Both the position numbers and the translations under genes were made by a program. From positions 62,001 to 126,000 of the IMG/VR virus record IMGVR_UViG_3300046787_000200: a DNA stretch of 64,000 nt; one strand, 5' to 3'. Positions 4,203 to 36,563 of the stretch are shown here, piece by piece. Positions within the stretch are counted from its first letter, which is position 1, and every line of letters starts with the position of its first letter. Below the pieces are notes generated by a model, which did no database searches, was not told the DNA's origin, and saw nothing but the letters and a program-made list of their open reading frames with translations.

Positions 4203-4246
4203 ATGGTATACGGAACTAAATAAAAAGATCCCGTAATATTATCACA

Positions 4247-5536: not shown

Positions 5537-5548
5537 CGAGAGACATTA

Positions 5549-6730: not shown

Positions 6731-6739
6731 GAAACGAAT

Positions 6740-10615: not shown

Positions 10616-11787
10616 TGGAAGAACAGATGTATGATATAAATTGTGTGACGAGATTGCACATTGAGTTATCAAGTAGATGTAATGCTAGTTGCCCTGCATG
10701 TAGTAGAAATCATAGCGGTGGCCCTGTTGCAGAAGATTTAGAACTTACTGAGTTATCAATCGATGATATCAAACGTATGGTTCCAGTAGAGATTGCACGA
10801 AATATAAAAAGTATTAATTACTGTGGCAATGTTGGTGATCCAGGTATGGCACCTGATCTATTAGAAATCATACAATATTTTAGAGAACATTCACCTAAGG
10901 TCGTACAACAAATTAGAACAAACGGTGGAATGCGCAACCCTGAGTATTGGACTAAGTTGGGTAATTTCTTTGCAAGACAAGCAGATCCCAATAATAAGTT
11001 CTTATTTAACATGGCAGGGGTAGTGTTTAGTGTTGATGGATTAGAAGATACTAATCACATTTATCGCAGAGGTGTTAAATGGGAAAAGTTAATTGCTAAC
11101 ATGAGAGCATATAGTGCTACCGGTGCATATGCTATATGGGAGTGGTTGATATTTGAGCACAATCAACATCAAGTTGAAGAAGCAAGAGCATTAGCAAAAG
11201 AATTAAATTTTCAGTTTATTGTTAAGAATCCACTAGGATTCGGTGAATATGATGGTAAAGTTAAGGGCTTATCTGTGTATAACAAAGAAGGTGCGTATGA
11301 GTACTCTATTTGGCCTGCTAATCACAAAGGTCCCAAAGAAGGACCAAACTTTGGTGAGAAAGTAGATTTCACTAAAATGATTAAAACGATTCCTATCATA
11401 AATGAATTCAGTAAAGAATTAGAAAAAACTTCTACAATAAAATGTAAGTCAATTGAACGTAAAGAATCACAAGAAGTTTATATCTCTGCTACTGGATACA
11501 TGCTACCATGTTGTTTCTTGGGAGGTGTATTTGGACAATTTAATAGTTCTTATAGTAGATATCAATTTAATACAATGATTAATGATTATGGATTGGATGT
11601 GTTTAATTTAAACAAACGTTCAATGTTAGAGATAATTAAAGGTCCTGAATTTTCAAAATTCTTTTTAGATGGTTGGAAAGCAGATACGATTGAGAATGGT
11701 AAATTGTTATTTTGTTTAGAAACATGCGGAAATCAATCTGCTATGGATAAATTATATAGAACTAAGATGATAGAGGTATCAAAATGA
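10615..11787 (+). CDS. Radical SAM protein with C-terminal SPASM/twitch cysteines
   Basis: N-terminal CNASCPAC; CGNVGDP in place of GGEP; C-terminal IKC...LPCC...CLETC. Confidence 0.88.
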   Translation: MEEQMYDINCVTRLHIELSSRCNASCPACSRNHSGGPVAEDLELTELSIDDIKRMVPVEIARNIKSINYCGNVGDPGMAPDLLEIIQYFREHSPKVVQQIRTNGGMRNPEYWTKLGNFFARQADPNNKFLFNMAGVVFSVDGLEDTNHIYRRGVKWEKLIANMRAYSATGAYAIWEWLIFEHNQHQVEEARALAKELNFQFIVKNPLGFGEYDGKVKGLSVYNKEGAYEYSIWPANHKGPKEGPNFGEKVDFTKMIKTIPIINEFSKELEKTSTIKCKSIERKESQEVYISATGYMLPCCFLGGVFGQFNSSYSRYQFNTMINDYGLDVFNLNKRSMLEIIKGPEFSKFFLDGWKADTIENGKLLFCLETCGNQSAMDKLYRTKMIEVSK

Positions 11788-12533
11788 GAATAGGTGTATT
11801 TGGTGATAGTTTCGCAGATAGAAACCCATACAATCCAGAAAGTCCCTTTAAGGAAGATGAATCATGGATGAAATGTATGGAAGATTCAGGACATGAAATT
11901 ACTACGTATGGGAAAACTGGTACTTCAACATGGTATTCGTTTCAACAATTCTTAGCACACCATGATCAATTTGATCATGTTATATTCTGTTATTCATCAA
12001 TGCATAGAATACATCATTTGCCAGAAGGACTTGAAGATTTAAGTTTCTTGACCACACCCGATCAACTTTATGAATTGAGAAAAAATAAAAACTTAACTCA
12101 ACGACAAGAATTGGATATAGTAAGAATACTTACAGGTCACGTACCTAACATTAGTACTACGTTTGACTTGTTTGTTAAGCAACATATATTTGATGAAGTT
12201 AATAATCTATGTAGAAATAAAAACATCAAGTTAGTTAATCTACTAACATTTGATGATAGAAAAGAAAAAAATTATTCTATTGACCTAGCGTTAAGAGCAG
12301 GTGATTGTTTATATAACTTATTTGAAGTAAGTCGTAGAGAATTACCTAGTATGGATAGAGTAGATAACAGATGGTGTCATTTATCACACGAATTAAATCT
12401 ATCATTGTCTGTACTATTAAGTCAATCTCTTAACAGTAAAGAATTACGCATTTTAGATTTACGCAAACATCCGGAATTTAATAAAGTTAACTATGATATC
12501 ACCTTGAGGTATATGAATGAGCCAACTACGTAA
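11784..12533 (+). CDS. SGNH/GDSL-like hydrolase or acyltransferase
   Basis: N-terminal FGDSF and late R-x-CH motif. Confidence 0.65.
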   Translation: MRIGVFGDSFADRNPYNPESPFKEDESWMKCMEDSGHEITTYGKTGTSTWYSFQQFLAHHDQFDHVIFCYSSMHRIHHLPEGLEDLSFLTTPDQLYELRKNKNLTQRQELDIVRILTGHVPNISTTFDLFVKQHIFDEVNNLCRNKNIKLVNLLTFDDRKEKNYSIDLALRAGDCLYNLFEVSRRELPSMDRVDNRWCHLSHELNLSLSVLLSQSLNSKELRILDLRKHPEFNKVNYDITLRYMNEPTT

Positions 12534-13263
12534 GATTATCACTTTGGGTGATAGTTTTACGTTTGGACATGGGTGTGCAGACCGTGAATATTACTATGAC
12601 CATGATACTAAAACATTCATAGGTGATCATAGACCTTTTAAAGAAAATATTCCTAGTCAATATTGTTGGCCTACTTTACTTCAGCAACATATGCATGAGG
12701 TTGAAGTTATTAATTTATCGCAACCGGCAAATTCCAATCAGGGACTATTCCGTAACTTATTAACCTATTGTGAAACCAACACAATTAATGAAGGTGATAT
12801 TATCATCTTTAACGGATCATTCCCGGGTAGGATAGACATTGCATCAGGTGCTCGTCCTGAAGTTACTGTTCCTTGGGTCATGGGTTGGGATCACCAATCA
12901 CAAATGGAAAATGAAATTGAATACAATGTTGCTAAAAAAATGTACATAACACATTTATTCAATGATTCAATAGGATATACACAATCATTGTCATCAGTAT
13001 TAGCAACACATGCATTTGCTACAATGTATAAAGCAAAGTATATTTGGTCATTGCCCAATCATGTTTATCCAAAAGAAGTTCTGGATAAACTAAAACCAAT
13101 TAATCATTTACGAATAACAGACTTATGTAAATATGATTTTTCTGGCACTAACACATATGATTTTAACAAAACTTGTTTTGCTCCCGATTATCACGTGAAT
13201 AATTTGGGACATTCTATATACTTGCAAAAACAAATAATCCCCGTCATACAATCCCTTCTATAA
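12517..13263 (+). CDS. SGNH/GDSL-like hydrolase
   Basis: GDSFTFG, NLS-x-P-x-x-SN, DYHVNNLGH. Confidence 0.75.
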   Translation: MSQLRKIITLGDSFTFGHGCADREYYYDHDTKTFIGDHRPFKENIPSQYCWPTLLQQHMHEVEVINLSQPANSNQGLFRNLLTYCETNTINEGDIIIFNGSFPGRIDIASGARPEVTVPWVMGWDHQSQMENEIEYNVAKKMYITHLFNDSIGYTQSLSSVLATHAFATMYKAKYIWSLPNHVYPKEVLDKLKPINHLRITDLCKYDFSGTNTYDFNKTCFAPDYHVNNLGHSIYLQKQIIPVIQSLL

Positions 13264-13271
13264 ATATCGTA

Positions 13272-14621
13272 ATGAATAATAATGAACAAATAGACAATCC
13301 AGACTCTGAATTCGTTGAAAAGAAAGTATTTCCCATACAAAACGAAGCCGCATGCTTGTACAAATGGGCATGGAGTACTATTTTCTTAAGCAGAGGTACA
13401 ACATCAAGTTGCCATAGAGGTCGTCATTGGAGATTGACTGAGGATAACTTCATGGATTTTCATAACCATCACGGTAAATTAGCCGACAGAGAAAAAATGT
13501 CGAGTGGGGAATGGCCTGGTAATGGTTGTGAGTACTGTAGAGATATAGAAAAAGCAGGTGGAACTAGTGATAGATCAGGATTTGTAAATGAATCAATAGA
13601 ACTATTACCACCTGAGTTTGAAGGATATGTACAGCGTATATATGAATATGATACTATCCCGTTAAAAGTAAGTCCTACACTATTAGAAGTTTATTTTAAC
13701 AATGTATGTAATCAATCATGTGTCTATTGCACTCCTGGATTTAGTAGTCAGATTGAACAAGAGGTTCGCAAATACGGGCCTAGCAAGTATAATGAAGATT
13801 ACAGCACATGGCGTCCTGATTCAAAATACGAATTGTATAAAGAAAAGTTTTGGGAATGGATGGCAAAGAATAGTGAGCATGTACAGATATTACAAGTATT
13901 AGGCGGTGAGCCACTATATCAAAAAGAGTTTGAACAATGTTTAGATTTCTTTGACAAGAACCCTAGACCTAATTTAGTATACCGTTCATTTAGTAATCTA
14001 AAACACGATCCTGAAAAGTTTAAAGCAAAGATACAGCGAGTACAAAACTTGATTGATCAAGGTAAATTAAAACGTATGGAAGTTGTATGTAGCATTGATT
14101 GCTGGGGTCCGGAAATTGAATATGTACGTGATGGCTTGATACTAGCCGAATGGGAAGAAAACATGAACACATTGTTAACGACTCCTGGTATGGGAGTATT
14201 AGTTCATGCTACACTTACTGCATTAACGTTGCCTACATTGAATCAATTGATAGAGAAAACAAATGAATGGCGTAAGATAAAAGATACAGTAGGTATCAAT
14301 TGGAATACAGTTGTTAGACCATCAACATTCAATCCATATAATTTTGGTAAATATTTGGCACCGTTTATTGATAGATCGATTGATGCATTAAATTACTATA
14401 GTAACCATGTAGAGAAAGAAAAGTTACAGACACACTTACGTGGTATACAACAACAGTTATTAACTACACCCGCAAATAAAAAAGAAGTTAATGACTTTGC
14501 TAACTTCTTAGATGATATAGACAAACGTAGAAATAGAGATTGGCGAACATTATTTCCGCAAATTGTAGATATTGTAAATATTATAAACAAAGAGGAACCA
14601 GACTATGTTCAAGTGGATTAA
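13272..14621 (+). CDS. N-terminal twitch-domain radical SAM protein
   Basis: CLYKW...SCHRG...CEYC; CNQSCVYC; GGEP; TATAAATA 5 nt upstream. Confidence 0.88.
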   Translation: MNNNEQIDNPDSEFVEKKVFPIQNEAACLYKWAWSTIFLSRGTTSSCHRGRHWRLTEDNFMDFHNHHGKLADREKMSSGEWPGNGCEYCRDIEKAGGTSDRSGFVNESIELLPPEFEGYVQRIYEYDTIPLKVSPTLLEVYFNNVCNQSCVYCTPGFSSQIEQEVRKYGPSKYNEDYSTWRPDSKYELYKEKFWEWMAKNSEHVQILQVLGGEPLYQKEFEQCLDFFDKNPRPNLVYRSFSNLKHDPEKFKAKIQRVQNLIDQGKLKRMEVVCSIDCWGPEIEYVRDGLILAEWEENMNTLLTTPGMGVLVHATLTALTLPTLNQLIEKTNEWRKIKDTVGINWNTVVRPSTFNPYNFGKYLAPFIDRSIDALNYYSNHVEKEKLQTHLRGIQQQLLTTPANKKEVNDFANFLDDIDKRRNRDWRTLFPQIVDIVNIINKEEPDYVQVD

Positions 14622-14709: not shown

Positions 14710-15518
14710 TTCCGCTGAATAATTTATTGGACTCACAAGACTTTAGTGAGGTAATTCCGTATACAAAAGTCGAGCATAAAACATTATCAATTGATGCATA
14801 TACTACTGATTTTGCATCATTTGATGATATGAAATATGCTGAGTACTGGCAAGGAGAGCAGTTCAATTATTTTTATAATAGATATGGATTCAGAGATATT
14901 GATGTTATCCCTGAATCCATAGACATAGGTGCATTTGGTTGTAGCTTCACTGCCGGGTTAGGATTACCGGAACATATGCTTTGGCATAAACTGTTAGGCA
15001 CCTCATCATACAATTTTGGTGTGTCGGGTGCTAGTACTAAATCAGTGTTTGATTTGTTTTTAATAACATCTAAACATGTTAAAATGAAAAATGCTATATT
15101 TTTACTACCAAGTTTAAATAGAGTTCAAATTGCGGCGACAAATCCATTATTGTCCAGAATATCTTATTTGTCAATTGTCCCTTCGCATAAAAGTGAATTA
15201 GCATTAGTACATGGGGTTGATAGTGAGTTGGTATACAAAGTATTACCGGAAGAAGAACAGATAAAAAACTTTAGAAACGATGCATACATCATAGATCATA
15301 TAGCAAAAGAACGTGGTATTAATGTATATCTGTCTACTTGGGACAGTCTTACATATGAAGTATTGGCACAATTAAAATTTACACATTGTACTGTATTGCC
15401 AGTATGGGGTTCTCTCTCACAGGAACAAGCAGAATCAGATTTAGCTAGAGATAAAAAACATCCGGGGCCAATACATCATCAGCAATGGGTTGACAAAATT
15501 AAACATTTAATAAAATGA
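14706..15518 (+). CDS. SGNH-like protein
   Basis: NRYGFRD, FGCSFTAG, NFGVSGAS, ARDKKHPG. Confidence 0.7.
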   Translation: MIPLNNLLDSQDFSEVIPYTKVEHKTLSIDAYTTDFASFDDMKYAEYWQGEQFNYFYNRYGFRDIDVIPESIDIGAFGCSFTAGLGLPEHMLWHKLLGTSSYNFGVSGASTKSVFDLFLITSKHVKMKNAIFLLPSLNRVQIAATNPLLSRISYLSIVPSHKSELALVHGVDSELVYKVLPEEEQIKNFRNDAYIIDHIAKERGINVYLSTWDSLTYEVLAQLKFTHCTVLPVWGSLSQEQAESDLARDKKHPGPIHHQQWVDKIKHLIK

Positions 15519-17020
15519 ACTACATAGGAATATCAGCCGGATTCCATGATGCGGCATTATCAGTTATTGACGATAGTGGCAATATATTATTTGCTGGACA
15601 TAGTGAACGTTATAATAAACAGAAACATACAAAACACTTATCAATTGGTATAGTTGAAGATGCATTATCGTATTGCAATAGCAGAGATATACAGATTCAT
15701 TACTATGAACGCCCGTGGATGAAGTTTCTACGACAAGTTCGTTCAGGTGAAAAGCCTAAGTTATCTAGTCTATTGCTTAAAGAAACAATTGGTACTGGAT
15801 TACTACACAAACTACAAGATGGCCGTGGGGGTAAAGTACATACTCACAATCATCATTTAAGTCATGCGGCTGCAGGGTTTCAAACAAGTCCATATGATGA
15901 TGCTACAGTAGTTGTTATTGATGCTATTGGTGAGTTCGACACTATCAGTATTTGGAACGCATACTATGACAAGAACGGTGTAGCACAATACAAAAAACTA
16001 TGGGGACAGAAGTACCCAGATAGCATTGGCTTATTCTATTCGGCAATGACAGAACGAGTGGGTTTGCGACCATTAGATGAAGAATACATTTTGATGGGCA
16101 TGGCGGCATATGGTAAGTCAAACCTAAAACAAGAATTAAAAGAAATGTCCGATACATTAATACGATCATATAAAGATATTACTTTTAAAGACAATCTACA
16201 TACGGGTGTGTCAGATGATTTGCTTAAAGATACAGACCATATGGATATTGCTTGTAGTACACAATTGATCGCAGAACAATTGATTGCATCTGTTATCAGT
16301 AGAGCAAAAAGTTTAAGTAATAGTAAGAACTTAGTATATGGTGGTGGCGTAGCATTAAATTGTTTAGCAAATAGATTATTAGGAAACTTTTATGACAACA
16401 TTTGGATTATGCCTAATCCTGGCGATGCTGGTTCTAGTCTTGGAGCGGCTTGTCTTGGTTATGGCAAACGTATTAACTGGACTGATGCTTACCTTGGTCA
16501 TAATATTCTTGGTCAGTATCCTGTCAATCAGTTATTGGATCATCTTACTACCACTGGCATTGTTGGTGTGGCTAATGGTCGTGCTGAGTTCGGACCTAGA
16601 GCCCTTGGACATAGAAGCCTACTTGCAGACCCAAGAGGAACAGAAATAAAGGATAAAGTAAATGAAATTAAACGTAGGCAAAAGTTTAGACCCTTTGCGC
16701 CAGTCATTCTGGAGGAGTATGCTGATATGTATTTTGATATGCCTCGTGGCTTCAGTAACAGTAGGTATATGCAAGTCATCGCTCGTTGCAGGCATCCTGA
16801 CTTATTTCCTGCTATCGTTCATAATGATGGTACTAGTAGGGTACAGACTGTGCCAAGGGATGGCTCCGGAATACGAGGACTATTAGAGAAATGGTATGTA
16901 TTGACAGGTTGCCCGATGTTGCTTAATACTAGCTTAAACATACGAGGCGAGCCAATGGTAAATGACCGAAACGATGCAGATCGCTTTGAAATAATGTATA
17001 ATGTAAAAGTTATATCATAA
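15515..17020 (+). CDS. Carbamoyltransferase (NodU/CmcH/TobZ family)
   Basis: GFHDAA, HHLSHAAA, GGVALNC, PGDAG, EFGPRALGHRSLLADPR, RPFAP, LLNTSLN. Confidence 0.95.
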   Translation: MNYIGISAGFHDAALSVIDDSGNILFAGHSERYNKQKHTKHLSIGIVEDALSYCNSRDIQIHYYERPWMKFLRQVRSGEKPKLSSLLLKETIGTGLLHKLQDGRGGKVHTHNHHLSHAAAGFQTSPYDDATVVVIDAIGEFDTISIWNAYYDKNGVAQYKKLWGQKYPDSIGLFYSAMTERVGLRPLDEEYILMGMAAYGKSNLKQELKEMSDTLIRSYKDITFKDNLHTGVSDDLLKDTDHMDIACSTQLIAEQLIASVISRAKSLSNSKNLVYGGGVALNCLANRLLGNFYDNIWIMPNPGDAGSSLGAACLGYGKRINWTDAYLGHNILGQYPVNQLLDHLTTTGIVGVANGRAEFGPRALGHRSLLADPRGTEIKDKVNEIKRRQKFRPFAPVILEEYADMYFDMPRGFSNSRYMQVIARCRHPDLFPAIVHNDGTSRVQTVPRDGSGIRGLLEKWYVLTGCPMLLNTSLNIRGEPMVNDRNDADRFEIMYNVKVIS

Positions 17021-17028
17021 GTATATGT

Positions 17029-20000
17029 ATGTTAAGAGATGTATTTTATTTCGGAGATAAACCCAACGTTCACCCAAGAGAAAAGTTTGCAGTAGATTTA
17101 GCTGATGCTAAACGACAGTCAACCACTGAGCACTTTTGGATAATTAACGAACATTGTAATTATAAAGATTTTGATTGGGACTGGGACTTTGATTTCCTAC
17201 CCGATGAAGATGTGTGGGCAGAAGAACACAACAATGTTTGGCCTAGCCCCTATCAGAAAGATAGTGGCACTTGGTTATGCAATGCAGACAATGATGAACC
17301 ACTAACAATCTATCGTGCAGACGTAGATCCTATTCCATTAAAAGATGAAGTAACAAGTAACTGGAAGATCATTGAATATATTGAAAAAGATAAATTTGAT
17401 TTTAAATGGCATCCAGACCCAACTGACCCTCCCTACATATATGTATTTGGTAATGAATGGTATCCCGGGACTATTATGCCCACAGTTGAATATCATGTTG
17501 AAGGTGCAACAGAACGTAAATATGTAACTGATCAAATAGCTCAACTATTACCAATGCCAATGTTGTTCAATATCATATATGAACCGGCGGAGTTTGATTA
17601 TAGTTGGAGACCAGACCCTACAGCACCACCTTATATCTATGTATTTGGTAACAATCAATATCCTGCAAGTGTGATGCCAACGGTTGAGTTTCATGTTGAA
17701 GGTGCAACAGAACGTAAGTTTATTGAAAATATTGTTCCTAAGTTGGCAGCAAGACCTGCAGAATTTGATGTATTAGAAGATATAGATCAGTCATCATTTG
17801 ATTTTAGTTGGGTCCCTGATCCTACTGCGCCTCCTTATATATATGCTTGGGGTAATCAATGGAACAAGCCAGAAGATAAAATTAGTGTTCAGTATGTAGC
17901 AGAAGGTGCGACAGAATACAAATACATGGATGCACGTACTAAACGTAAGGAGTCAATGAATAATTGGAACATACCACCTAATATGTTTCAAAATAAGTTT
18001 GATTTTAGTTGGGAACCTAGTCCGGCTGATCTACCGTTCATATATCAATTTGGTACTCAATGGCAAAAAACACATGGTCCTCAATATATTGTAGAAGGCG
18101 CTACCGAGATAAAATATGTTGACGTATTAAAAGCAGAAGTTGTATGTACTGAGTTTGAAAATTGGCAAGTACCTAGAAACATTGACCAATCTAAGTTTGA
18201 TTTTAGTTGGCATCCCGATAGCACAGAAGAACCATACATCTATCAATTTCCTGATCAGTGGACCAGAACCGGTGGACCTAGATATGTCGTACCCGGCGCA
18301 ACTGAAATCAAGTACATAGATGTGCAGACAGCAACAGCTAAACATGACAAGACACACTGGGTTATACCTGATGATATTGATGTTAGTGAGTTTGATTTTA
18401 GTTGGCACCCCGACATAGATCACGCACCATTGATATATCAATTTGGAACTCAGTGGCAACGAACTAGTGGACCTAAGTTTTATGCAGTCGGTTGCACAGA
18501 AGATAGTGATATACAATATGTTGACATTATCAAAGCTAAAGCTTTGCCTAATAAAGAATTATGGCAAACATTAATCTCAGTAGATAATTTTGATTATAGC
18601 TGGCATCCAGATGAAACTGAAGAACCCTACATATATGTTTTTGGCAATCAATGGAATCGTGCTGAAGTAGAACCTACATTAATATATGAGATGCCTGGAG
18701 CAACACATAAAAAGTATATTAATGACATTGGTATTAAAGCATCTGCATATGCTGAAGGTTGGGAAACAATTGAAGATATTGAATCATTTGATTACAGTTG
18801 GAGACCTGATCCAGGGGATCCCGCATACATATATGTATTTGGTAATAAGCAATATGATGGCACAATTATGCCCACAGTTAAATTACATATCAAAGACGCT
18901 ACACAAGAAAAGTTTGTTGATGATATTGTTGCAACATTGGCACAACGTCCCGATCTATTTAAAAACACAGAACTAATCAAAGACTTTGACTATTCATGGA
19001 GACCAAACCCTAAAGACCCACCGTATGTATATCAGTTCGGGACACAATGGGCTAAAACACATGGACCTCAGTTTATTATACCTGAAGCTATTGAGACAAA
19101 ATTTATTAACTATCCAGTTGCAACAATATTGCCTGATATGACACACTGGGAAATACCAGAGAATGTTGATGTTACTAAGTTTGATTTTAGCTGGCACCCA
19201 GATGGTACTGCACCCGCATACATCTATCAATTTGGCACACTGCTTGATGATAAAGATGGTCCTAGATATATTACACCTGATAATGATGGTATAGTTGTTA
19301 ATTTAGAGCGTAAAGAAATCATATTAGAAGAATTGATATTCCCTAAGTACAATATAAAGACCACACTAGAAGATTTAATAAACGAACATGAAGGTGAAAT
19401 CTTTTGGGCTATCAACCCTGAACTTGACTACTCAAACTTTGATTTCAAGTGGGTACCTGATAAACAAAATGTCTATCACATTAATGCATTCGGTAGTAAA
19501 GATAATATCAACACACAGACTTATTTTGTCAATGGTAAAATGTGGCAGAAAGGCTACCGTGATATTAATTACGTTGAAGATAAAGTAATTGATGTTAGAA
19601 CTAAAATTGATATGTTCTTTGTTGACAGAGGTAATAGTCAATCACAAGAACGATTCAATAAGCTAAAGGCAAAGTTTGATAACATCACTAAAACACGATA
19701 CTTGAACAGTTGGGTTGATACAATTAATCGGTGTATTACTAAGTCAAGTACAAACTTGTGCTGGATATTGAACAGTGAGCTTGACTATGATGATTTTGAG
19801 TTTGATTACTATCCTAGTCCATGGCAAATGCGCATGGTTCATGTGTTCGGTACTCAGTGGAGTCATTGGGGCACAACGTTTATGGTTAACAAACATAGCT
19901 TCAGTGAAGATACAAAATATGTTAAAGTTATTGAACATTTAAGTAATCTTAACTTTGTCAAACGTAAGACTGCTAAAGCAACTAATTGTTTGTATGACAT

Positions 20001-21312
20001 ATATTTGATAGACCATGGAAATGAGTTACCAAAAGACATTAAAGGACATAATTATACTACGGTCAAATATGAACGTAGTTACTTAAACACATTTAAGAAT
20101 TTAGTAAAGACTTTACCGGACAAGAAAGAACATTATATTTGGATATGCAGTAGCGTATGTGATTATGAAAACTTTGATTTTGGTTATATTTGTGATCCAT
20201 ATGCCAAAGATCAATTACATGTATTCCCAAGCGACAAACAAAAGTTTGGAGATACTTTCCTAATTGATGTAAATAAGTTACGCACATTAATTGATGATAT
20301 GATTATGTTGGAAGATTATGAGAAGGTCAACTATAATCAACATCAAAGGGCGAAACGTTTACCTGCCCCTATTATTATTACGAAAGAAGATACACATGTT
20401 AACGATATTCATACTGACTTTGATTGGCCTTACGCTACGTTTGTCACGGAAGACAATAAAGAAATACAAGTAACAGATGTAGAACCAATGAGTTTATGGA
20501 CACCTGATAGTAAAAATATTATTATTACTAGTACCGGTGCAACACGAATCATTGTACCTAAAGAAGCAAAAGATTATGTAGAGAATGAGTTGTATGATTA
20601 TCCATACATCAGCCGTAGTAAATCTCTAGTTAAATCTCAGCCACTGGATATAGTCTTCCTAAGCAACGGTGAAACTGGTGCTGACGAGAACTACGAACAT
20701 TTACTGAAAGTGACTACGGGATTAAAGAATAGAGTTGTGCGTGTAGATGGCGTTAATGGTCGTGTACAAGCCTATCATGCGGCAGCAGAAGCAAGTAACA
20801 CGCCATGGATGTTCACCGTGTTTGCTAAGTTACGTGTTGATGATAAATTTGATTGGTCATGGCAACCTGATAGACTACAAGTACCCAAGCATTATATCTT
20901 TAATGCAACAAACCCTGTCAATGGATTAGAGTATGGTCACCAAGCTATGATTGCTTATAACAAGAAGATTACATTAGCTAATACTGGTAGAGGGCTTGAC
21001 TTCACATTAGATGACGAACATGAAGTTGTTGAAATGAATAGCGGTATAGCTATGTACAATACAGATGCCTGGAGTACATGGCGTACTGCATTTAGAGAAG
21101 CACTAAAACTAAGAGCCGATACTAGCCAAGCAAGTAAAGATAGATTAGATGCATGGTTAAATAAAGGCGAAGGGAACTTTGCCCAATATAGTTGTGAAGG
21201 TGCGCAACATGCTATAGAATACTATGAATCAGTTAATGGTGATTTAGATAAATTACGTCTAAGTTATGATTGGCCTTGGTTGAAAGAGTATTTTAATAAT
21301 AAATACAATTGA
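17029..21312 (+). CDS. 1427-aa protein with internal tandem repeats and C-terminal glycosyltransferase(GT-A)-like domains
   Basis: About 10 FD(F/Y)SWxPDx4PYIYxFG repeats; C-terminal DIVFLSNGE...RVDGVNG...YHAAA...WRTAFRE. Confidence 0.75.
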   Translation: MLRDVFYFGDKPNVHPREKFAVDLADAKRQSTTEHFWIINEHCNYKDFDWDWDFDFLPDEDVWAEEHNNVWPSPYQKDSGTWLCNADNDEPLTIYRADVDPIPLKDEVTSNWKIIEYIEKDKFDFKWHPDPTDPPYIYVFGNEWYPGTIMPTVEYHVEGATERKYVTDQIAQLLPMPMLFNIIYEPAEFDYSWRPDPTAPPYIYVFGNNQYPASVMPTVEFHVEGATERKFIENIVPKLAARPAEFDVLEDIDQSSFDFSWVPDPTAPPYIYAWGNQWNKPEDKISVQYVAEGATEYKYMDARTKRKESMNNWNIPPNMFQNKFDFSWEPSPADLPFIYQFGTQWQKTHGPQYIVEGATEIKYVDVLKAEVVCTEFENWQVPRNIDQSKFDFSWHPDSTEEPYIYQFPDQWTRTGGPRYVVPGATEIKYIDVQTATAKHDKTHWVIPDDIDVSEFDFSWHPDIDHAPLIYQFGTQWQRTSGPKFYAVGCTEDSDIQYVDIIKAKALPNKELWQTLISVDNFDYSWHPDETEEPYIYVFGNQWNRAEVEPTLIYEMPGATHKKYINDIGIKASAYAEGWETIEDIESFDYSWRPDPGDPAYIYVFGNKQYDGTIMPTVKLHIKDATQEKFVDDIVATLAQRPDLFKNTELIKDFDYSWRPNPKDPPYVYQFGTQWAKTHGPQFIIPEAIETKFINYPVATILPDMTHWEIPENVDVTKFDFSWHPDGTAPAYIYQFGTLLDDKDGPRYITPDNDGIVVNLERKEIILEELIFPKYNIKTTLEDLINEHEGEIFWAINPELDYSNFDFKWVPDKQNVYHINAFGSKDNINTQTYFVNGKMWQKGYRDINYVEDKVIDVRTKIDMFFVDRGNSQSQERFNKLKAKFDNITKTRYLNSWVDTINRCITKSSTNLCWILNSELDYDDFEFDYYPSPWQMRMVHVFGTQWSHWGTTFMVNKHSFSEDTKYVKVIEHLSNLNFVKRKTAKATNCLYDIYLIDHGNELPKDIKGHNYTTVKYERSYLNTFKNLVKTLPDKKEHYIWICSSVCDYENFDFGYICDPYAKDQLHVFPSDKQKFGDTFLIDVNKLRTLIDDMIMLEDYEKVNYNQHQRAKRLPAPIIITKEDTHVNDIHTDFDWPYATFVTEDNKEIQVTDVEPMSLWTPDSKNIIITSTGATRIIVPKEAKDYVENELYDYPYISRSKSLVKSQPLDIVFLSNGETGADENYEHLLKVTTGLKNRVVRVDGVNGRVQAYHAAAEASNTPWMFTVFAKLRVDDKFDWSWQPDRLQVPKHYIFNATNPVNGLEYGHQAMIAYNKKITLANTGRGLDFTLDDEHEVVEMNSGIAMYNTDAWSTWRTAFREALKLRADTSQASKDRLDAWLNKGEGNFAQYSCEGAQHAIEYYESVNGDLDKLRLSYDWPWLKEYFNNKYN
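17395..19290 (+). repeat. Ten diverged ~60-70 aa protein repeats
   Basis: Recurrent FD(F/Y)SW(H/R)PD, P(Y/F)IY(V/Q)FG, GATE-x-K(Y/F); recurrent ttgattttagttgg at DNA level. Confidence 0.9.
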
Positions 21313-21648
21313 AGTTATTGCTGTATGAAGCAAAGAGAAAAGTGTCTTGGACGGGGGTGCGAATCCCCCCAGGTCCACCATAAAACACATTAAGCCTGGG
21401 TTGCCGGGTCAGTAGACATGCAGGGTTACCTTGCGTCACTTCTGAAAAATAGTGTGTTTTATGATGGGCCTGACCTAGATTCGACAGGGCAACAAGTAAA
21501 TTAGTGGACAGCTCGGCAACGCAGAAGCCGTCAGGGTTGGGGGTTCCCGACTATAGAAGCACAAAAGTAAACGCAAACGACTCACAGTTCGCATTAGCAG
21601 CCTAAACGCCGCTTAGGGTAAGACATACCTCGTAACAGAAAATCAGAT
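21311..21648 (+). ncRNA. ssrA: Circularly permuted (two-piece) tmRNA; tag peptide ANDSQFALAA
   Basis: Acceptor piece first (T-arm GGGGG-TGCGAAT-CCCCC, CAGGTCC-ACCA ending 21380), intervening segment 21381-21465, then 5' end GGGCCTG at 21466 (G3.U70 Ala identity), GATTCGAC, tag frame 21573-21605; outer ends approximate. Confidence 0.92.
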
Positions 21649-21649
21649 G

Positions 21650-21674
21650 GGGCACTTAGGTGCCCTTTTCTTTT
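21650..21674 (+). terminator. Intrinsic terminator after tmRNA
   Basis: GGGCAC-TTAG-GTGCCC followed by TTTTCTTTT. Confidence 0.85.
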
Positions 21675-21701
21675 GCTATCATACAAGTTGTGATATATAA
21701 T
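21673..21701 (+). promoter_or_regulatory. Sigma70-type promoter of the tRNA
   Basis: TTGCTA-17 nt-TATAAT ending 10 nt before the tRNA. Confidence 0.7.
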
Positions 21702-21711
21702 AGATACAAAT

Positions 21712-21786
21712 GCGATTGATACTCGGTGGACGAGAAGGAGCCTCTAAAACTCTGATTTGCGGGTTCGATTCCCGTCAATCGCACCA
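21712..21786 (+). tRNA. Amber suppressor tRNA (anticodon CTA at 21744-21746)
   Basis: Acceptor GCGATTG/CAATCGC + ACCA; D-stem CTCG/CGAG; anticodon arm GGAGC-CTCTAAA-ACTCT (one C.A mismatch); T-arm GCGGG-TTCGATT-CCCGT. Confidence 0.88.
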
Positions 21787-21919
21787 GAGCAGAGGTTTAT
21801 CTATTGAAACCAGTATGAGTCGCTAAGGTAGTATACTAACCCTTAGGGCAAGCAACAGTATTAAATATACAGTAGATGACGGCCGAGAATAGAACGGCAA
21901 CTTTTTAAAGGAAAATAAA

Positions 21920-22492
21920 ATGGCATAGATTGAATATGGTTGTAAAGATGTAGTCTTTCACTTTAACAAAAAACATTTAGAAGACGAGACCGTACCAATG
22001 TGGGTCTTAAAAACACATGGTGAAACTTTTTACGTGAATCATGTTCATTGTAAAATGCCTTGGGATACAAAAGAAACTCCGGACAATACGCACACTAAAG
22101 GCTCTATCAAAATCAAGGAATGTCTCCTTACGATTGACGATGAGAATAATGCGACAATAGATAAACTGTCTGTATACGATAAGATTCGATTACGCAATCA
22201 ACGATTGGGTATCACACGAATTATGTTCAAGCCTGGCAGTCAAATGCATAGAGCATTACAGAACAAAGAGTTTAAGCACAGTTCTTTCAAAGTTATTGCA
22301 GGTGCATGTACAACTACATTCTTTGTTTGTGATATGCTAGTAAAATCTGAGGTTACATTTGCTTCATTGAAGTATGATGACTTTAGAATTTTATCACCCA
22401 ATGAAGGATATTATAAAGAATATGATAGTGTAAAAGATGGAAGGATTCAAGCAAATTATAGTGATCCGGACACCCCATATGAGTATTCTTAA
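21920..22492 (+). CDS. Hypothetical protein (190 codons) with in-frame TAG at codon 3; ORF track starts it at internal ATG 21998
   Basis: AAGGA SD then ATG GCA TAG ATT GAA TAT..., in frame with 21998 (78 nt, no other stop); ATG 21998 lacks a comparable SD. Confidence 0.7.
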
Positions 22493-24248: not shown

Positions 24249-25133
24249 ATGAAGAAAATCGCAATAGCGACATTATTAGTTGCATCAACAATGGTAGCAA
24301 CTGCACAAGTTAGATTAACAGGTAAAGTTAGCGAGTTCGTTGACAATACTAAAACAGGTGCAGTAAGCAAGACCAGTCTAGTAGCAGATCCAACAAGTAA
24401 CATTACCTTCTCAGCAACTGAAAAGATTATTGGTACTTTGACAGCTAATGTAGTACTAGATACAAGTTTAGCGGCTAATGATCCTATCGGTGGTGCTGAT
24501 ACTAAATTGGGCAATCGTCAATCTACAATTGGCTTGTCTAGTAAAGTTGGTAGCATTGACCTAGGTCGTAATCTACACAGTCATTTCTTAGCAATTACTA
24601 ACAATGATGCATTCGGCACATTGTATGGTTCTATTGCAGGTGATGTACATAATGTGCGTGGTGTTCGTGTCAGTAATGGTACGTTCCTTGCATTGAAGCC
24701 TATTATGGGCGTAACTGCAACTTATGACCGCACACACAATGGTGTAGGAACTGAAGCATCTAGTTACAGCGCAAGCGCATCAATGTTTGGTGTTAATGCA
24801 ACTGTTGCACAATTCACACAAGGTATTGAGAAAAGTACAGTGATTGGTGCAAGTGCAAAACTAGGTACTGCTAAAGTATTTTACACACATAGTGATGACA
24901 AAGGTGTAGTAGCAAGCACAGGTGATCTAGTCGGTGTAAGTCAACAATTTGGTGCAGTAACGGCAAAAGCAAGTTATGGTAAAACCAATACTGATGTTAA
25001 GGCTTACGCATTAGGTGCTGATTATAATTTGAGCAAGCGTACTATTGTTGGAGCAACATATCGTAATGTTGACGCAGTAGGTACAGCAAGTGATATTAAA
25101 CAAGTTGGAGTTGGTGTAACACACCGCTTCTAA
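24249..25133 (+). CDS. Gram-negative porin (betaproteobacterial type)
   Basis: Signal peptide; NRQSTIGL, IDLGR, ADYNLSKRT, C-terminal VGVTHRF. Confidence 0.88.
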   Translation: MKKIAIATLLVASTMVATAQVRLTGKVSEFVDNTKTGAVSKTSLVADPTSNITFSATEKIIGTLTANVVLDTSLAANDPIGGADTKLGNRQSTIGLSSKVGSIDLGRNLHSHFLAITNNDAFGTLYGSIAGDVHNVRGVRVSNGTFLALKPIMGVTATYDRTHNGVGTEASSYSASASMFGVNATVAQFTQGIEKSTVIGASAKLGTAKVFYTHSDDKGVVASTGDLVGVSQQFGAVTAKASYGKTNTDVKAYALGADYNLSKRTIVGATYRNVDAVGTASDIKQVGVGVTHRF

Positions 25134-25984: not shown

Positions 25985-27085
25985 ATGGCATCAGTATCAG
26001 ACAATCTGACAATCACATCAGTACAAACCCGCAAAGCTATTCTTAAAGCTTTTAAAGCAAAACGTCCCGTATTCTTGTGGGGCCCGCCCGGTATCGGTAA
26101 ATCAGAAGTTGTGCAGGAAGTTGCTGACGAACTTCAAGGTCATGTGATTGATTTGCGTATGGCACAGATGGAGCCGACTGATATTCGCGGTATCCCTTAC
26201 TTCAACAAAGATATCAATAAGATGGATTGGGCGGCACCGGTTGATTTGCCTAGTGAAGAACTTGCAAGTCAGTACCCGATTGTTGTATTGTTCTTGGATG
26301 AAATGAACAGTGCGCCCCCAGCTGTACAGGCTGCAGGCTATCAGTTGATTTTGAATCGCCGTGTAGGTAAGTATGTATTGCCCGATAACGTTGTTATCGT
26401 TGCGGCTGGTAACCGTGATAGCGACAAAGGTGTTACATATCGTATGCCGATGCCCCTCGCTAATCGTTTCTTGCACTTGGAAATGCGAGCCGATTTTACT
26501 GCATGGCAGAACTGGGCTGTGAACAAAGGTATTCACAAAGACGTTGTGGGTTACTTGTCATTCGCTAAACAAGATTTGTATGAGTTTGATAGTAAATCAA
26601 GTTCACGTGCGTTCGCTACACCGCGTTCATGGTGTTTCGTTAGTGACTTGTTGAATGATGAAGATGACACAGATTCAGATACATTGTTCAACTTGATCAG
26701 TGGTGCAGTTGGTGAAGGTCTTGCTGTTAAGTTTGCGGCACACCGCAAAGTTGCAGGTAAGATGCCCGACCCGGCAGATATCTTGTCAGGTAAAGTTAAG
26801 GACCTTGCAGTTAAGGAAATCTCTGCAATGTATTCATTGACAATTTCAATGTGTTATGAATTGCGTGATGCACTTGAAACTAATAAAGTTGAAAGCAAGA
26901 AATTCCATGAAATGGCTGATAACTTCTTCAACTACATTATGACTAACTTTGAGACTGAGTTGGTTGTGATGGGTGCTAAGATTGCGCTTAAGACATACAA
27001 GTTGCCGATTGAGCCAAGTCAGTTGAAAAACTTTGACGAGTTTCATAAGAAATACGGCAAGTATATTGTTCAAGCAGGTGAGTAA
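25985..27085 (+). CDS. MoxR-family AAA+ ATPase
   Basis: GPPGIGKS Walker A, LFLDEMN Walker B, AAGNR, LANRF, TPRSW. Confidence 0.9.
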   Translation: MASVSDNLTITSVQTRKAILKAFKAKRPVFLWGPPGIGKSEVVQEVADELQGHVIDLRMAQMEPTDIRGIPYFNKDINKMDWAAPVDLPSEELASQYPIVVLFLDEMNSAPPAVQAAGYQLILNRRVGKYVLPDNVVIVAAGNRDSDKGVTYRMPMPLANRFLHLEMRADFTAWQNWAVNKGIHKDVVGYLSFAKQDLYEFDSKSSSRAFATPRSWCFVSDLLNDEDDTDSDTLFNLISGAVGEGLAVKFAAHRKVAGKMPDPADILSGKVKDLAVKEISAMYSLTISMCYELRDALETNKVESKKFHEMADNFFNYIMTNFETELVVMGAKIALKTYKLPIEPSQLKNFDEFHKKYGKYIVQAGE

Positions 27086-27128
27086 TTCGAAGGGTGCTAG
27101 TCACCCTTCTTTTTAATAAGGAAATAAA

Positions 27129-27281
27129 ATGAGTGGTAAGAAATATTTTTATGCATTGGGACAAAGTGCCCGGGCCAAAGGAATGACAAAGGACCAAGGC
27201 ATGGCCCTGTACTCAATTGAGTCCGCACAGGATTACGCACGTATTGCATTTGATGCAGGATATCGTGGACTGTCAATTTGA
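27129..27281 (+). CDS. 50-aa hypothetical protein (not in ORF track)
   Basis: AAGGA SD, MSGKKYFYALGQSARAKG...GYRGLSI. Confidence 0.6.
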   Translation: MSGKKYFYALGQSARAKGMTKDQGMALYSIESAQDYARIAFDAGYRGLSI

Positions 27282-27306
27282 CAATAAATCATATATGTGC
27301 TATAAT
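27278..27306 (+). promoter_or_regulatory. Phage early promoter
   Basis: TTGACA-ATAAATC...-TATAAT, 17-nt spacer. Confidence 0.85.
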
Positions 27307-27332
27307 ACACACATATTCAGTAAAGGAACAAC

Positions 27333-28610
27333 ATGAGCGAAGTTCTCTCTCCCAGTAAAAAACGTAGTCGTAGCAAGAAGTTTGAAAATCTTGTAGGTCC
27401 GACAGATAAAAAAGTTGACTTTGATGCACGTGAGCGATTGGTCACTGCCCGTATCGGTCTACTATTGCGTCATTCATTCTTTGGTAATCTTGCAACACGT
27501 ATGCAATTGATTAATGCCGATGAATGGTGTAGTACTGCCGCAACTGACGGCCAGAAGTTCTATTATAATAGTCGCTTCATTATGATGTTGAAGCCTAAAG
27601 AAGTTGAATTCTTGGTAGGTCATGAAGTGTTACACGTGGTGTATGATCACATGGGCCGACGTGATAATCGTGACCCTGAAATCTGGAACATTGCTGATGA
27701 CTATGCAGTTAATGCAGATTTGAAACGTCACAAAGTAGGTCAATTCATTACATCGGTACCTTGCTTGTATGAAACAAAGTATGATGGCAAAGCCGCAGAA
27801 GCAATCTATGATGACTTGATGAAGAATGTTCAAAAGATTGACATTAATTCATTGATTGATCAAATGCTTGATGATCACCTCGATGGTGAAGGTGATGACG
27901 GTGAGGGTGATGGTGAGGGAAATCAAAAGGGTAAAGGTCGTCCCAAGATGACACCTGAAGAACGTGAGCGAGTTCGTCAGGAAGTTAAGCAGGCTATTAT
28001 CAATGCCGCACAAAGTGCAGAAGCAGGTCAATTGCCCTTGGGTGTTGAGCGTTTGATTCGTCAACATACTAACCCTGTGATGCCCTGGCGTGAATTGATT
28101 CAAACGAATTTGACAAGTGCTATTCGTTCAGATTACAGTTGGATGCGCCCCTCACGTAGAGGTTGGCATATGGATGCAATTATGCCTGGTATGAATCCCG
28201 GTGAAGAAATTGATGTTGTTGTATCAATCGATATGTCAGGCTCTATCAGTAACAAACAAGCACAACAGTTCTTGGGTGAGATTGGTGGCATGATGGATTC
28301 GTTTGATGGTTACAAGGTCCATGTATTCTGTTTTGATACTGACACTTACAATCCGAAAGATTTCAGTAGCGAGAATATGGAATTGATTGAAGAATATGAG
28401 CCGATGGGCGGTGGCGGTACTGACTTTGATTGTATCTTCAAGTACTTGAAAGATAATGCTATTGATCCGAAACGATTGATTGTGTTTACAGATGGCTATC
28501 CCTGCGGTAGTTGGGGTGACCCAGACTATTGTGATACTACTTGGATCATTCACGGTGACCCTAATCCGAATCCCCCATTCGGTACATTTGCACTATATGA
28601 CGAGAAGTGA
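27333..28610 (+). CDS. Metallopeptidase-like plus vWA domain protein (DUF2201-like), MoxR partner
   Basis: TAATDG, HEVLH (HExxH), DMSGS MIDAS, GGGGTDF, FTDGY. Confidence 0.88.
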   Translation: MSEVLSPSKKRSRSKKFENLVGPTDKKVDFDARERLVTARIGLLLRHSFFGNLATRMQLINADEWCSTAATDGQKFYYNSRFIMMLKPKEVEFLVGHEVLHVVYDHMGRRDNRDPEIWNIADDYAVNADLKRHKVGQFITSVPCLYETKYDGKAAEAIYDDLMKNVQKIDINSLIDQMLDDHLDGEGDDGEGDGEGNQKGKGRPKMTPEERERVRQEVKQAIINAAQSAEAGQLPLGVERLIRQHTNPVMPWRELIQTNLTSAIRSDYSWMRPSRRGWHMDAIMPGMNPGEEIDVVVSIDMSGSISNKQAQQFLGEIGGMMDSFDGYKVHVFCFDTDTYNPKDFSSENMELIEEYEPMGGGGTDFDCIFKYLKDNAIDPKRLIVFTDGYPCGSWGDPDYCDTTWIIHGDPNPNPPFGTFALYDEK

Positions 28611-36560: not shown

Positions 36561-36563
36561 TTG

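What the first reader, a model, noticed from the sequence alone, without database searches (positions are those of the whole stretch)
21673..21786. Amber-suppressor tRNA with its own promoter in a genome that is not recoded
Seen: a full cloverleaf with encoded CCA, anticodon CTA, A73 and a consensus-like sigma70 promoter. Genes in the window are intact under the standard code, and by my count only two normal genes end in TAG (36560, 61168). Known: CUA suppressor tRNAs are typical of TAG-recoded phages. Inference: here suppression would be gene-specific or an early stage of recoding. The charged amino acid cannot be determined from the sequence.
Basis: partly seen in the sequence, partly recalled or inferred. 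Interest (0 to 1): 0.75.

Follow-up and report, generated by a model that had tools for sequence, protein, structure and literature searches.

The report
Amber tRNA gates its neighbour gene
A 352-kb freshwater phage carries a real UAG-reading tRNA, and the gene next to it has a strictly conserved UAG at its third codon, so the tRNA and the gene look like a two-part expression switch that recurs in well over a hundred phage contigs and that I did not find described in the literature.

Summary
Window 21712-21786 is a genuine elongator tRNA with anticodon CUA, A73 and encoded CCA, behind a sigma70-like promoter. The genome (a 352,012-bp IMG/VR phage) is not recoded.

The next gene downstream starts SD-ATG-GCA-TAG (TAG at 21926-21928). 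The 23 codons after the TAG are conserved coding sequence with no start codon of their own. In 152 of 160 related loci (79 distinct sequence contexts) a short variable Met leader is followed by an invariant TAG, never TAA or TGA, usually followed by A.

A tRNA(CUA) lies within 3 kb in about 80% of those loci, often 20-50 nt upstream on the same transcript. A cultured Rhizobium phage has the same pair.

The gated protein is a phage-only beta-barrel domain ("FHFNK") with no match in any library. In one sub-clade the gate instead sits on a PTH2 peptidyl-tRNA hydrolase placed between the tRNA and the FHFNK gene. In the window's clade a two-piece tmRNA is also linked.

Best reading: a dedicated amber gate that ties synthesis of a translation-surveillance protein to suppressor activity. 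The inserted amino acid, the protein's function and the direction of any feedback remain unknown.

The parts
21279..21671 (+). Two-piece (permuted) tmRNA gene. Tag reading frame ANDSQFALAA-stop. Own promoter-like site at 21280-21309.
   Evidence: Rfam beta_tmRNA 106 bits (gathering 84) and tmRNA_permuted 113 bits (gathering 47). ARAGORN permuted tmRNA. Promoter scan. A permuted tmRNA lies within 3 kb of the gated gene in about 35 of 80 relatives.
21649..21676 (+). Intrinsic terminator hairpin plus T-run that ends the tmRNA transcript. It abuts the -35 hexamer of the tRNA promoter.
   Evidence: Terminator scan: 7-bp stem with 5 GC pairs, followed by TTTCTTTT.
21673..21701 (+). Sigma70-type promoter of the tRNA: TTGCTA, 17 nt, TATAAT. 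The -10 hexamer ends 10 nt before the tRNA.
   Evidence: In 22 of 42 distinct related tRNA loci a match of at least 9 of 12 is present, and in most of these the -10 hexamer ends 8-9 nt before tRNA position 1.
21712..21786 (+). Elongator tRNA with anticodon CUA (21744-21746), A73, encoded CCA, C31.A39 mismatch and a 3-bp D stem.
   Evidence: Covariation in 43 homologues. Identical in an independent run.
21908..21912 (+). Shine-Dalgarno AAGGA, 7 nt before the ATG at 21920.
   Evidence: Sequence. In relatives the SD follows the ATG whatever the leader length, not the TAG.
21920..21928 (+). Gate: ATG GCA TAG. This is the start codon, one leader codon and the in-frame amber codon at 21926-21928, followed by A.
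   Evidence: TAG is invariant in 80 of 80 close loci and 72 of 80 more distant loci. 79 distinct contexts, with A at +4 in 74.
21929..22168 (+). FHFNK domain, residues 1-80 after the TAG. An eight-stranded all-beta domain; the first strand and the FHFNK motif lie before the first internal Met at 21998.
   Evidence: tblastn hits start at residue 4-5. Invariant residues in 1-23. Variability by codon position 0.10/0.05/0.37. AF2 pLDDT 96. No PDB or Pfam match.
22169..22492 (+). C-terminal alpha/beta domain and acidic tail of the same protein. Stop codon TAA at 22490-22492.

Best explanation
The tRNA(CUA) and the gene downstream of it form a dedicated amber gate. Host RNA polymerase transcribes the tRNA from its own sigma70-type promoter. 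In many relatives the gated mRNA is on the same transcript, 20-50 nt behind the CCA end. Ribosomes start at the SD-ATG of the neighbouring gene and meet UAG at codon 3. If RF1 wins, only a dipeptide is released. If the charged phage tRNA wins, the full 189-residue FHFNK protein is made. The amount of protein therefore reports how well UAG is being suppressed in that cell. Because the UAG sits in a variable leader outside the conserved domain, any inserted amino acid will do. What the protein does is inferred only from its company. That company is a PTH2 peptidyl-tRNA hydrolase, gated in the same way in one sub-clade, a phage tmRNA, and the tRNA itself. I therefore propose that it acts in translation surveillance (peptidyl-tRNA, termination or ribosome rescue) and that the gate scales it to suppressor activity, in the manner of the in-frame UGA of prfB. 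Shown here: the tRNA, the conserved TAG, the coding status of the sequence after it, and the linkage. Inferred: that this tRNA reads this TAG, co-transcription, and the whole functional purpose. The confidence of 0.7 is for the gate itself (this tRNA reads this TAG to make the full protein). For the surveillance and feedback purpose I would give about 0.3.
For: (1) The 23 codons between the TAG and the first canonical start codon are coding. Homologues align from residue 4-5. Residues I1, E2, C5, D7, V9-K14 are invariant. Third-position variability is 0.37 against 0.10 and 0.05. In the AF2 model these residues form the first strand of the domain.
(2) There is no ATG, GTG or TTG between the TAG and 21998. 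The SD tracks the upstream ATG through leaders of 1-9 codons.
(3) TAG is present in 80 of 80 and 72 of 80 fetched loci, and in L084, L085, L197 and Rhizobium phage RHph_I1_18. The codon before it takes 18 forms, and the gene's own terminal stop is TAA or TGA, never TAG.
(4) tRNA(CUA) lies within 3 kb in 61 of 80 and 62 of 72 gated loci, always on the same strand, and as close as 27 nt to the TAG. In another record it lay just outside the fetched flank.
(5) The gate occurs on both sides of the deepest, well-supported split of the family tree.
(6) In TAG-less FHFNK loci and their relatives (nine loci checked) the gene between the tRNA(CUA) and the FHFNK gene is a PTH2 hydrolase with its own TAG at codon 3-5.
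(7) TAG-less family members start with Met exactly where the gated ones have TAG. This places the TAG outside the functional domain.
(8) A crude genome-wide scan found no other convincing in-frame TAG.
Against: There is no direct evidence of translation or of charging. Six of eight TAG-less FHFNK loci still keep a tRNA(CUA) next door, and four of those six have the gate on the adjacent PTH2 gene. So the tRNA may have clients or roles beyond this one gene. One 93%-complete relative (the record of L070) has the gate but no tRNA(CUA) that my patterns could find. The protein matches nothing known in Pfam, PHROGs, NCBIfam, PADLOC, PDB, AFDB or BFVD, so the proposed surveillance role rests on gene neighbourhood alone. 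Other conserved neighbours are unrelated to translation: a Zn-ribbon protein, AhpC and CMD. The window's own genome has no PTH2, Pth or SmpB.
Confidence: 0.7

Rival explanations
1. General-purpose suppressor, or the first step towards TAG recoding (the route proposed for gut phages). The tRNA was acquired in a low-GC, TAG-poor genome, and the TAG next door is simply the first in-frame stop that became tolerated.
For: Low GC (about 36%) and rare TAG stops fit the proposed path (preprint 10.1101/2021.08.26.457843). The tRNA(CUA) is retained next to TAG-less FHFNK genes.
Against: The same gene at the same position carries the TAG in lineages whose FHFNK domains are only about 50-60% identical and whose tRNA bodies differ. 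No sense codon ever replaces the TAG in 79 contexts although all neighbouring codons drift. That is purifying selection on the stop itself, not tolerance. No spread of TAG into structural or lysis genes was seen.
Confidence: 0.1
2. Mini-ORF with termination-reinitiation. Ribosomes terminate at the TAG and restart at the next codon (ATT) without any tRNA(CUA). The tRNA is linked for another reason.
For: The codon after TAG is ATT in 62 of 79 contexts. AUU is a known rare start codon (own knowledge: infC). In TAG-less relatives the Met start sits at the TAG position.
Against: A coupling stop could be TAA or TGA, yet it is TAG in 79 of 79 contexts while TAG is about 5% of stops genome-wide. The following codon is ATC, ATA, AAT, AAC, GTT, GTC, GTA or CCC in 17 contexts. 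The amber-specific tRNA is physically attached.
Confidence: 0.07
3. The UAG encodes a special (non-canonical) residue required at that site, as with pyrrolysine.
For: ARAGORN labels the tRNA 'Pyl'. There is a dedicated tRNA beside a gene with one UAG.
Against: The tRNA has a canonical T loop, GG in the D loop and a 5-nt variable loop, unlike tRNAPyl. No synthetase or biosynthesis genes recur nearby. The site lies in a variable leader and is replaced by the initiator Met in relatives. The tRNA bodies differ between clades.
Confidence: 0.03
4. Artefact or decay: a sequencing error in the anticodon or the TAG, or a dying gene.
For: None beyond the low Rfam score (35.7 bits) and the odd D arm.
Against: The sequence is identical in independent runs. 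There is covariation in 43 tRNAs, strong purifying selection on the protein, and 1,889 database clusters of the protein.
Confidence: 0.01

Closest known systems
Suppressor tRNAs of TAG-recoded (code 15) phages such as crAss-like and Lak phages
   Same: A phage-encoded tRNA(CUA) in a low-GC, TAG-poor genome. In-frame TAG is proposed to regulate expression (PMC9523058 listed).
   Different: In those phages dozens to hundreds of genes, mostly late and lysis genes, carry TAG and the standard code breaks the genome. Here coding density is 93.6% under the standard code and one gene carries one TAG at a fixed site.
prfB (RF2) autoregulation through an early in-frame UGA (own knowledge)
   Same: An early in-frame stop codon makes the yield of a translation factor depend on how that very stop is decoded.
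   Different: prfB needs a +1 frameshift and its product is the release factor itself. Here the frame continues, a dedicated tRNA reads the stop, and the product's activity is unknown.
Pyrrolysine system: pylT next to genes with a single in-frame UAG (own knowledge)
   Same: A dedicated tRNA(CUA) and a client gene with one conserved UAG in a genome that otherwise uses UAG as a stop.
   Different: No PylRS or pylBCD genes, the tRNA lacks tRNAPyl features, and the UAG lies outside the functional domain.
Synthetic amber-suppression logic gates, e.g. supD tRNA plus an amber-containing T7 RNA polymerase (own knowledge)
   Same: A two-input design: the output protein is made only if both its mRNA and a suppressor tRNA are present.
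   Different: This one is natural, compact, often a single tRNA-mRNA transcript, and evolutionarily conserved.
Orphan suppressor tRNAs reported in standard-code phages (RsoM2USA, Summit, Atu_ph07)
   Same: A CUA or UCA tRNA in a non-recoded phage (PMC9022506 abstract).
   Different: Those reports name no target ('possible target genes ... are not identified'). Here a specific, conserved target is identified.

Membership tests
Elongator tRNA (Rfam RF00005) | Cloverleaf scoring above the family's gathering score | tested here: met
   35.7 bits against 29. ARAGORN.
Elongator tRNA (Rfam RF00005) | Helices supported by compensatory changes in homologues | tested here: met
   16 of 20 pairs have double changes across 43 sequences.
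Amber suppressor tRNA | Anticodon CUA in a 7-nt loop with U33 and a purine at position 37 | tested here: met
   Loop CUCUAAA. CUA is invariant in all homologues.
Amber suppressor tRNA | Aminoacylated, and reads UAG in vivo | not testable with these tools
   Only indirect evidence: a conserved in-frame TAG in the adjacent gene.
tRNA-Pyl | 3-nt variable loop, small D loop without GG, no T-psi-C consensus, pylS nearby | tested here: not met
   5-nt variable loop, GG in the D loop, GTTCGA T loop. No synthetase among recurrent neighbours.
Bacterial initiator tRNA (reading UAG as a start) | 1x72 mismatch and three G-C pairs at the base of the anticodon stem | tested here: not met
   G1-C72 is paired. 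The anticodon stem is GGAGC/ACUCU with a loop-proximal mismatch.
TAG-recoded (code 15) phage genome | Standard code fragments many genes, with in-frame TAG in many genes | tested here: not met
   93.6% coding under the standard code. Only one convincing in-frame TAG.
prfB-like autoregulatory in-frame stop | Early in-frame stop conserved in the gene | tested here: met
   TAG at codon 2-10 in 152 of 160 loci.
prfB-like autoregulatory in-frame stop | The gene product itself acts on decoding of that stop | not testable with these tools
   The protein has no known family or fold. Only its neighbourhood (PTH2, tmRNA) points to translation.
Two-piece tmRNA (Rfam RF01850 / RF04321) | Score above gathering, with an alanine-type tag frame ending ..ALAA-stop | tested here: met
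   106 and 113 bits. Tag ANDSQFALAA.
PTH2 peptidyl-tRNA hydrolase (gated gene in the sub-clade L131, L143, L149, L161, L192-L196) | Pfam PF01981 above its cut-off | tested here: met
   27.5-64 bits against a cut-off of 23 for four loci. The window genome itself has none.

The most novel reading that the evidence does not exclude
The tRNA(CUA), the amber-gated FHFNK and PTH2 genes, and (in jumbo phages) the tmRNA form a mobile phage module that deliberately changes how infected cells handle UAG and stalled ribosomes. The gate would be a built-in sensor, so that the clean-up or control protein is made in proportion to suppression. That would be a natural, tRNA-based analogue of the prfB feedback loop, and the FHFNK domain would be a new kind of translation factor.
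Probability: 0.3. Interest if true: 0.9.

Novelty: new variant of a known kind. Interest (0 to 1): 0.8.

Why it matters
Suppressor tRNAs are often annotated in phages that use the standard code, and the reports I read leave their targets unidentified. This finding gives one such tRNA a concrete, conserved client and a testable logic: one tRNA, one UAG, one gene. It also exposes a systematic annotation error. Gene callers either truncate this family at Met24 or translate the TAG as Gln under code 15. It defines a phage-only protein domain with a confident but unmatched fold. It links that domain to peptidyl-tRNA hydrolase and tmRNA, which points to an unexplored way in which phages manage termination and ribosome rescue. 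The cassette is small (about 0.8 kb) and could serve as a natural part for amber-based gene control. A cultured carrier exists for experiments (Rhizobium phage RHph_I1_18).

Tried and rejected
Function of the gated protein. Pfam, PHROGs, NCBIfam and PADLOC gave nothing. A profile search of PDB sequences gave only noise. Foldseek against PDB and AFDB and VIA-align wide gave no match (best Z 3.3). BFVD and the ESM Atlas gave only unnamed phage proteins, some fused to DUF2061. The language-model 'pectate lyase' look-alikes were not borne out by the fold and are rejected.

Complex prediction. It is no evidence either way.

Amino-acid identity. The nearest paralogue among the genome's 34 other tRNAs is only 65-69% identical. 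The 'Q' at the TAG position in database proteins is a code-15 gene-calling artefact, because the DNA has TAG.

DegT-TAG-radical-SAM fusion by readthrough (35496-37553). Rejected as programmed, because the stop is TAA in 8 of 21 relatives and the second gene has its own ATG.

Other gated genes. No convincing second gated ORF was found between the tRNA and the FHFNK gene in the window's clade, or elsewhere in the genome. The scans were crude and used no homology.

SmpB, Pth and PTH2 were sought in the genome and not found.

Other searches. P0135 as a query in IMG/VR found nothing. The family is essentially absent from 185,579 prokaryote genomes, with one hit on a MAG contig that looks phage-derived. 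Six literature searches found no description of this cassette.

Full report
**1. What is at the coordinates**

The window is bases 62,001-126,000 of a single 352,012-bp IMG/VR virus record rated complete by CheckV. It has about 36% G+C, and 34 further tRNA genes are clustered at 300-315 kb.

ARAGORN finds a 75-nt tRNA with anticodon cta at 21712-21786. Rfam's tRNA model scores it above threshold. Read directly, the tRNA has these features:
- G1-C72, C2-G71 and G3-C70
- A73 and an encoded CCA
- anticodon loop CUCUAAA
- a C31.A39 mismatch at the loop end of the anticodon stem
- an unusual D arm (A8, a 3-bp stem)

It sits directly behind the terminator hairpin of a two-piece tmRNA gene at 21279-21671, whose tag is ANDSQFALAA.

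**2. The tRNA is real**

Sixty-two related loci yielded 43 distinct tRNA(CUA) sequences. Aligned, they give the cloverleaf, with compensatory changes in 16 of 20 pairs. CUA, U33 and A37 are invariant, and the first three acceptor pairs are invariant apart from one G1-U72. A73 is nearly invariant.

The 31.39 position is usually a mismatch (C.A, C.C or A.C) or a G.U pair.

In 22 of 42 distinct loci a sigma70-type promoter matching at least 9 of 12 positions is present. In most of these its -10 hexamer ends 8-9 nt before tRNA position 1. Transcription would then start at or next to the mature 5' end.

Contigs from independent freshwater and estuary runs carry the tRNA, and X3's piece matches it exactly. 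No differences are listed at the anticodon in either run.

**3. The genome is not recoded**

Under the standard code, non-overlapping ORFs of at least 60 aa cover 93.6% of the genome. Stop codons are TAA 262, TGA 148 and TAG 21. Among ORFs of at least 100 aa, TAG ends 9 of 317.

Readthrough of the TAG-ending ORFs adds only 1-65 codons, with one exception. That exception is DegT aminotransferase (35496-36560), whose TAG is in frame with a radical-SAM gene (36561-37553). These are two genes with separate domains, and the second has its own ATG. In relatives the stop is TAG in 13 loci and TAA in 8. It is an ordinary stop.

**4. The missed target**

The next gene downstream starts AAGGA-N7-ATG GCA TAG ATT GAA, with the TAG at 21926-21928. 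ORF lists begin it at the ATG at 21998. The 23 codons between the TAG and that ATG are nevertheless coding, on four grounds:
- tblastn hits in three other phages begin at residue 4-5 after the TAG.
- Ten of the first 14 residues are invariant in 52 homologues.
- Nucleotide variability by codon position is 0.10/0.05/0.37, a tighter constraint than in the following 23 codons.
- In AlphaFold models (pLDDT 85.6 for the whole protein, 96.3 for the domain) these residues form the first long strand of the domain.

There is no ATG, GTG or TTG in that stretch. The only start with a Shine-Dalgarno sequence is the ATG two codons before the TAG.

**5. Conservation of the gate**

In 80 of 80 IMG/VR loci encoding close relatives (71-81% identity), the pattern is: SD, ATG, 1-8 variable codons, TAG, then Ile-Glu-Tyr/Phe-Ala-Cys-Lys-Asp. 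Their terminal stops are TAA (49) or TGA (28), never TAG.

A second, more diverse set of 80 loci includes one-domain versions of about 80 aa. It has the gate in 72.

Pooled, there are 79 distinct 24-nt contexts. All have TAG. The preceding codon takes 18 forms. The next base is A in 74 and a purine in 78. From my own knowledge, that context favours suppression over termination.

Further carriers are L084, L085 and L197. The cultured Rhizobium phage RHph_I1_18 is another: there the ORF is unannotated, reads MSEFM-TAG-NESCREVIFHFNK, and is followed 11 nt later by an annotated tRNA(cta).

On a maximum-likelihood tree of the domain, gated genes lie on both sides of the deepest starred split (100/99). 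The open state needs 2-4 changes.

**6. Linkage to the tRNA**

A tRNA(cta) lies within the fetched 3-kb flanks in:
- 61 of 80 set-1 loci
- 62 of 72 gated set-2 loci
- 6 of 8 ungated set-2 loci

It is always on the same strand. Five of the set-1 loci without it are cut off on the upstream side. One further record has it about 2 kb beyond the flank.

The tRNA's CCA end is 27-55 nt from the TAG in several loci. In L047, from a 343-kb relative, the CCA end is 20 nt from the ATG and only the SD lies between. In those cases the mRNA must come from the tRNA's promoter.

In the small-ORF clade the order is reversed, and the ORF's last codons and stop codon overlap the first 15 nt of the tRNA.

The tRNA bodies differ between clades (GCG.., GGC.., GCT.. 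acceptor stems). What is conserved with the gene is the anticodon, not a particular tRNA lineage.

**7. What the protein is**

The family has 171 clusters at 50% identity and 1,889 at 90%. It matches no Pfam, PHROG, NCBIfam or PADLOC family. It is essentially absent from 185,579 prokaryote genomes.

Three architectures occur:
- domain plus an alpha/beta C-domain and an acidic tail, as in the window
- the domain alone
- a helical N-part plus the domain, as in Sinorhizobium phage Phosso and Agrobacterium phage Atu_ph07

The domain model finds nothing in the PDB (best Z 3.3). It matches only unnamed phage proteins in BFVD and the Atlas.

Family members without a TAG begin Met-[Ile/Val/Leu]-Glu. 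Their initiator Met sits exactly where the gated genes have TAG. The TAG therefore lies outside the domain, and the identity of the inserted residue should not matter.

Public protein sets either truncate the protein at Met24 or show 'Q' at the TAG position because a code-15 model was chosen. The DNA has TAG.

**8. A second gated gene**

In the ungated FHFNK loci L131, L149 and L161, the gene directly upstream is a PTH2-type peptidyl-tRNA hydrolase (Pfam PF01981). The same is true in L143, whose FHFNK gene has a TAG at codon 17 instead. Each PTH2 gene has its own TAG at codon 3-5 and a tRNA(cta) just upstream.

Five more loci found with that PTH2 show the same order: tRNA(cta), gated PTH2, open FHFNK gene.

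In Phosso and Atu_ph07 the order is PTH2, an unknown gene, then the FHFNK gene, without a TAG. Atu_ph07's only reported suppressor reads UGA.

The gate thus sits on the first cistron behind the tRNA, and FHFNK keeps company with a peptidyl-tRNA hydrolase. In the window's clade PTH2 is missing, but a permuted tmRNA lies within 3 kb in about 35 of 80 loci. The genome also encodes a 124-aa GGQ (RF-1 domain, ArfB-like) protein among its tRNAs.

**9. Mechanism**

Shown: a real tRNA(CUA), a conserved in-frame UAG followed by translated sequence, physical linkage, and repeated use of the same device on two gene families.

Inferred: the tRNA reads that UAG in competition with RF1, so the protein is made only when, and roughly as much as, the suppressor is active.

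Further inferred, with less support: the products (PTH2 and FHFNK, with tmRNA nearby) deal with peptidyl-tRNA or stalled ribosomes, and the gate matches them to suppression. This resembles the way the in-frame UGA of prfB matches RF2 synthesis to RF2 activity (own knowledge). I cannot tell whether the protein promotes, limits or merely accompanies suppression.

**10. Amino acid**

The tRNA has a short variable loop, so by bacterial rules it is not a class II tRNA (Leu, Ser, Tyr). A73 argues against Gln, Trp and Glu, which use G73 in E. coli. G3-C70 excludes Ala. U35 with A73 would suit LysRS. These statements rest on E. coli identity rules recalled from memory.

No paralogue in the genome is closer than 69%. 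The residue remains undetermined.

**11. Loose ends**

- One 93%-complete relative has the gate but no tRNA(CUA) detectable by two simple patterns.
- The genome-wide search for other in-frame TAGs was crude.
- An RNA-library contig from the source study covers 21932-22082, but DNA carry-over cannot be excluded.
- The complex prediction was not run by the tool.

**12. Verdict**

The finding becomes more interesting than stated, because it is a conserved tRNA-plus-gated-gene cassette with a candidate role in translation surveillance. I found no description of it in six literature searches.

Noticed in passing
window 21279-21671: A two-piece (circularly permuted) tmRNA gene in a phage, with its own promoter-like site, its own terminator and the tag ANDSQFALAA. 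The genome has no SmpB, so it would depend on the host's. RNA-library contigs cover it at high depth, but other organisms' tmRNAs may contribute.
   Followed up: partly
window 35496-37553: DegT aminotransferase ends in TAG exactly in frame with the following radical-SAM gene, and the 6-nt spacing is conserved. With the suppressor present, some fusion protein should be made. Relatives alternate TAG (13) and TAA (8), so it is not required.
   Followed up: yes
window 560-14621: A tandem run of about eleven paralogous genes of 390-450 aa. The three sampled are radical SAM enzymes, two of them with an N-terminal SPASM domain. They are followed by a carbamoyltransferase at 15515-17020. This looks like a large modification or biosynthesis cluster in a phage.
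   Followed up: partly
window 24249-25133: A phage-encoded Gram-negative porin (Porin_4, E 1e-22).
   Followed up: no
window 25985-28610: A MoxR-like AAA ATPase followed by a DUF2201 metallopeptidase/VWA protein. This is a known two-gene pairing, here in a phage.
   Followed up: no
window 17029-21312: A 1,427-aa ORF with no Pfam or PHROG match. Its 3' end overlaps the tmRNA promoter and the start of the tmRNA.
   Followed up: no
G000:C1:312348-312635 (- strand; L191 1411-1785): A 124-aa protein consisting only of the GGQ peptidyl-hydrolase (RF-1) domain, ArfB-like, inside the tRNA array. Together with the tmRNA it gives the phage two ribosome-rescue devices.
   Followed up: partly
L005, L017, L025, L030, L033, L047, L055, L060 and others, upstream of the tRNA: Near-consensus TTGACA-16/17-TATAAT promoters whose -10 hexamer ends 8-9 nt before tRNA position 1. 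The tRNA may be transcribed without a 5' leader and so without needing RNase P.
   Followed up: partly
L088 3226-3240 (also L089, L090, L094, L099-L103): In the one-domain clade the gated ORF's last four codons and its TAA lie inside the first 15 nt of the tRNA(CUA) gene. Cutting out the tRNA would leave the mRNA without a stop codon.
   Followed up: no
P0001-P0120, L084, L085: Public protein sets show 'Q' where the DNA has TAG, because a code-15 model was chosen on short contigs. Other copies are truncated at Met24. The family is therefore systematically mis-annotated.
   Followed up: yes
window 21741 and 21749 (tRNA positions 31 and 39); alignment A3: The loop-proximal pair of the anticodon stem is a mismatch (C.A, C.C, A.C) or G.U in most family members, which gives in effect a 4-bp stem. 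A recent paper links 4-bp anticodon stems to stop-codon reading (PMC13092985, title and abstract only).
   Followed up: partly
L070 (record G001, 330,024 bp, 93% complete): The gate is present (MS-TAG-IEYACKD), but no tRNA(CUA) was found by ARAGORN in the locus or by two patterns in the whole record. A tRNA array with an odd tRNA that ARAGORN could not assign lies just upstream.
   Followed up: partly
L143 3004-3237: An FHFNK gene with a normal Met start but an in-frame TAG at codon 17, inside the domain (..AHITDP-TAG-GIPPW..), next to a gated PTH2 and a tRNA(cta). Here the inserted residue would matter.
   Followed up: no
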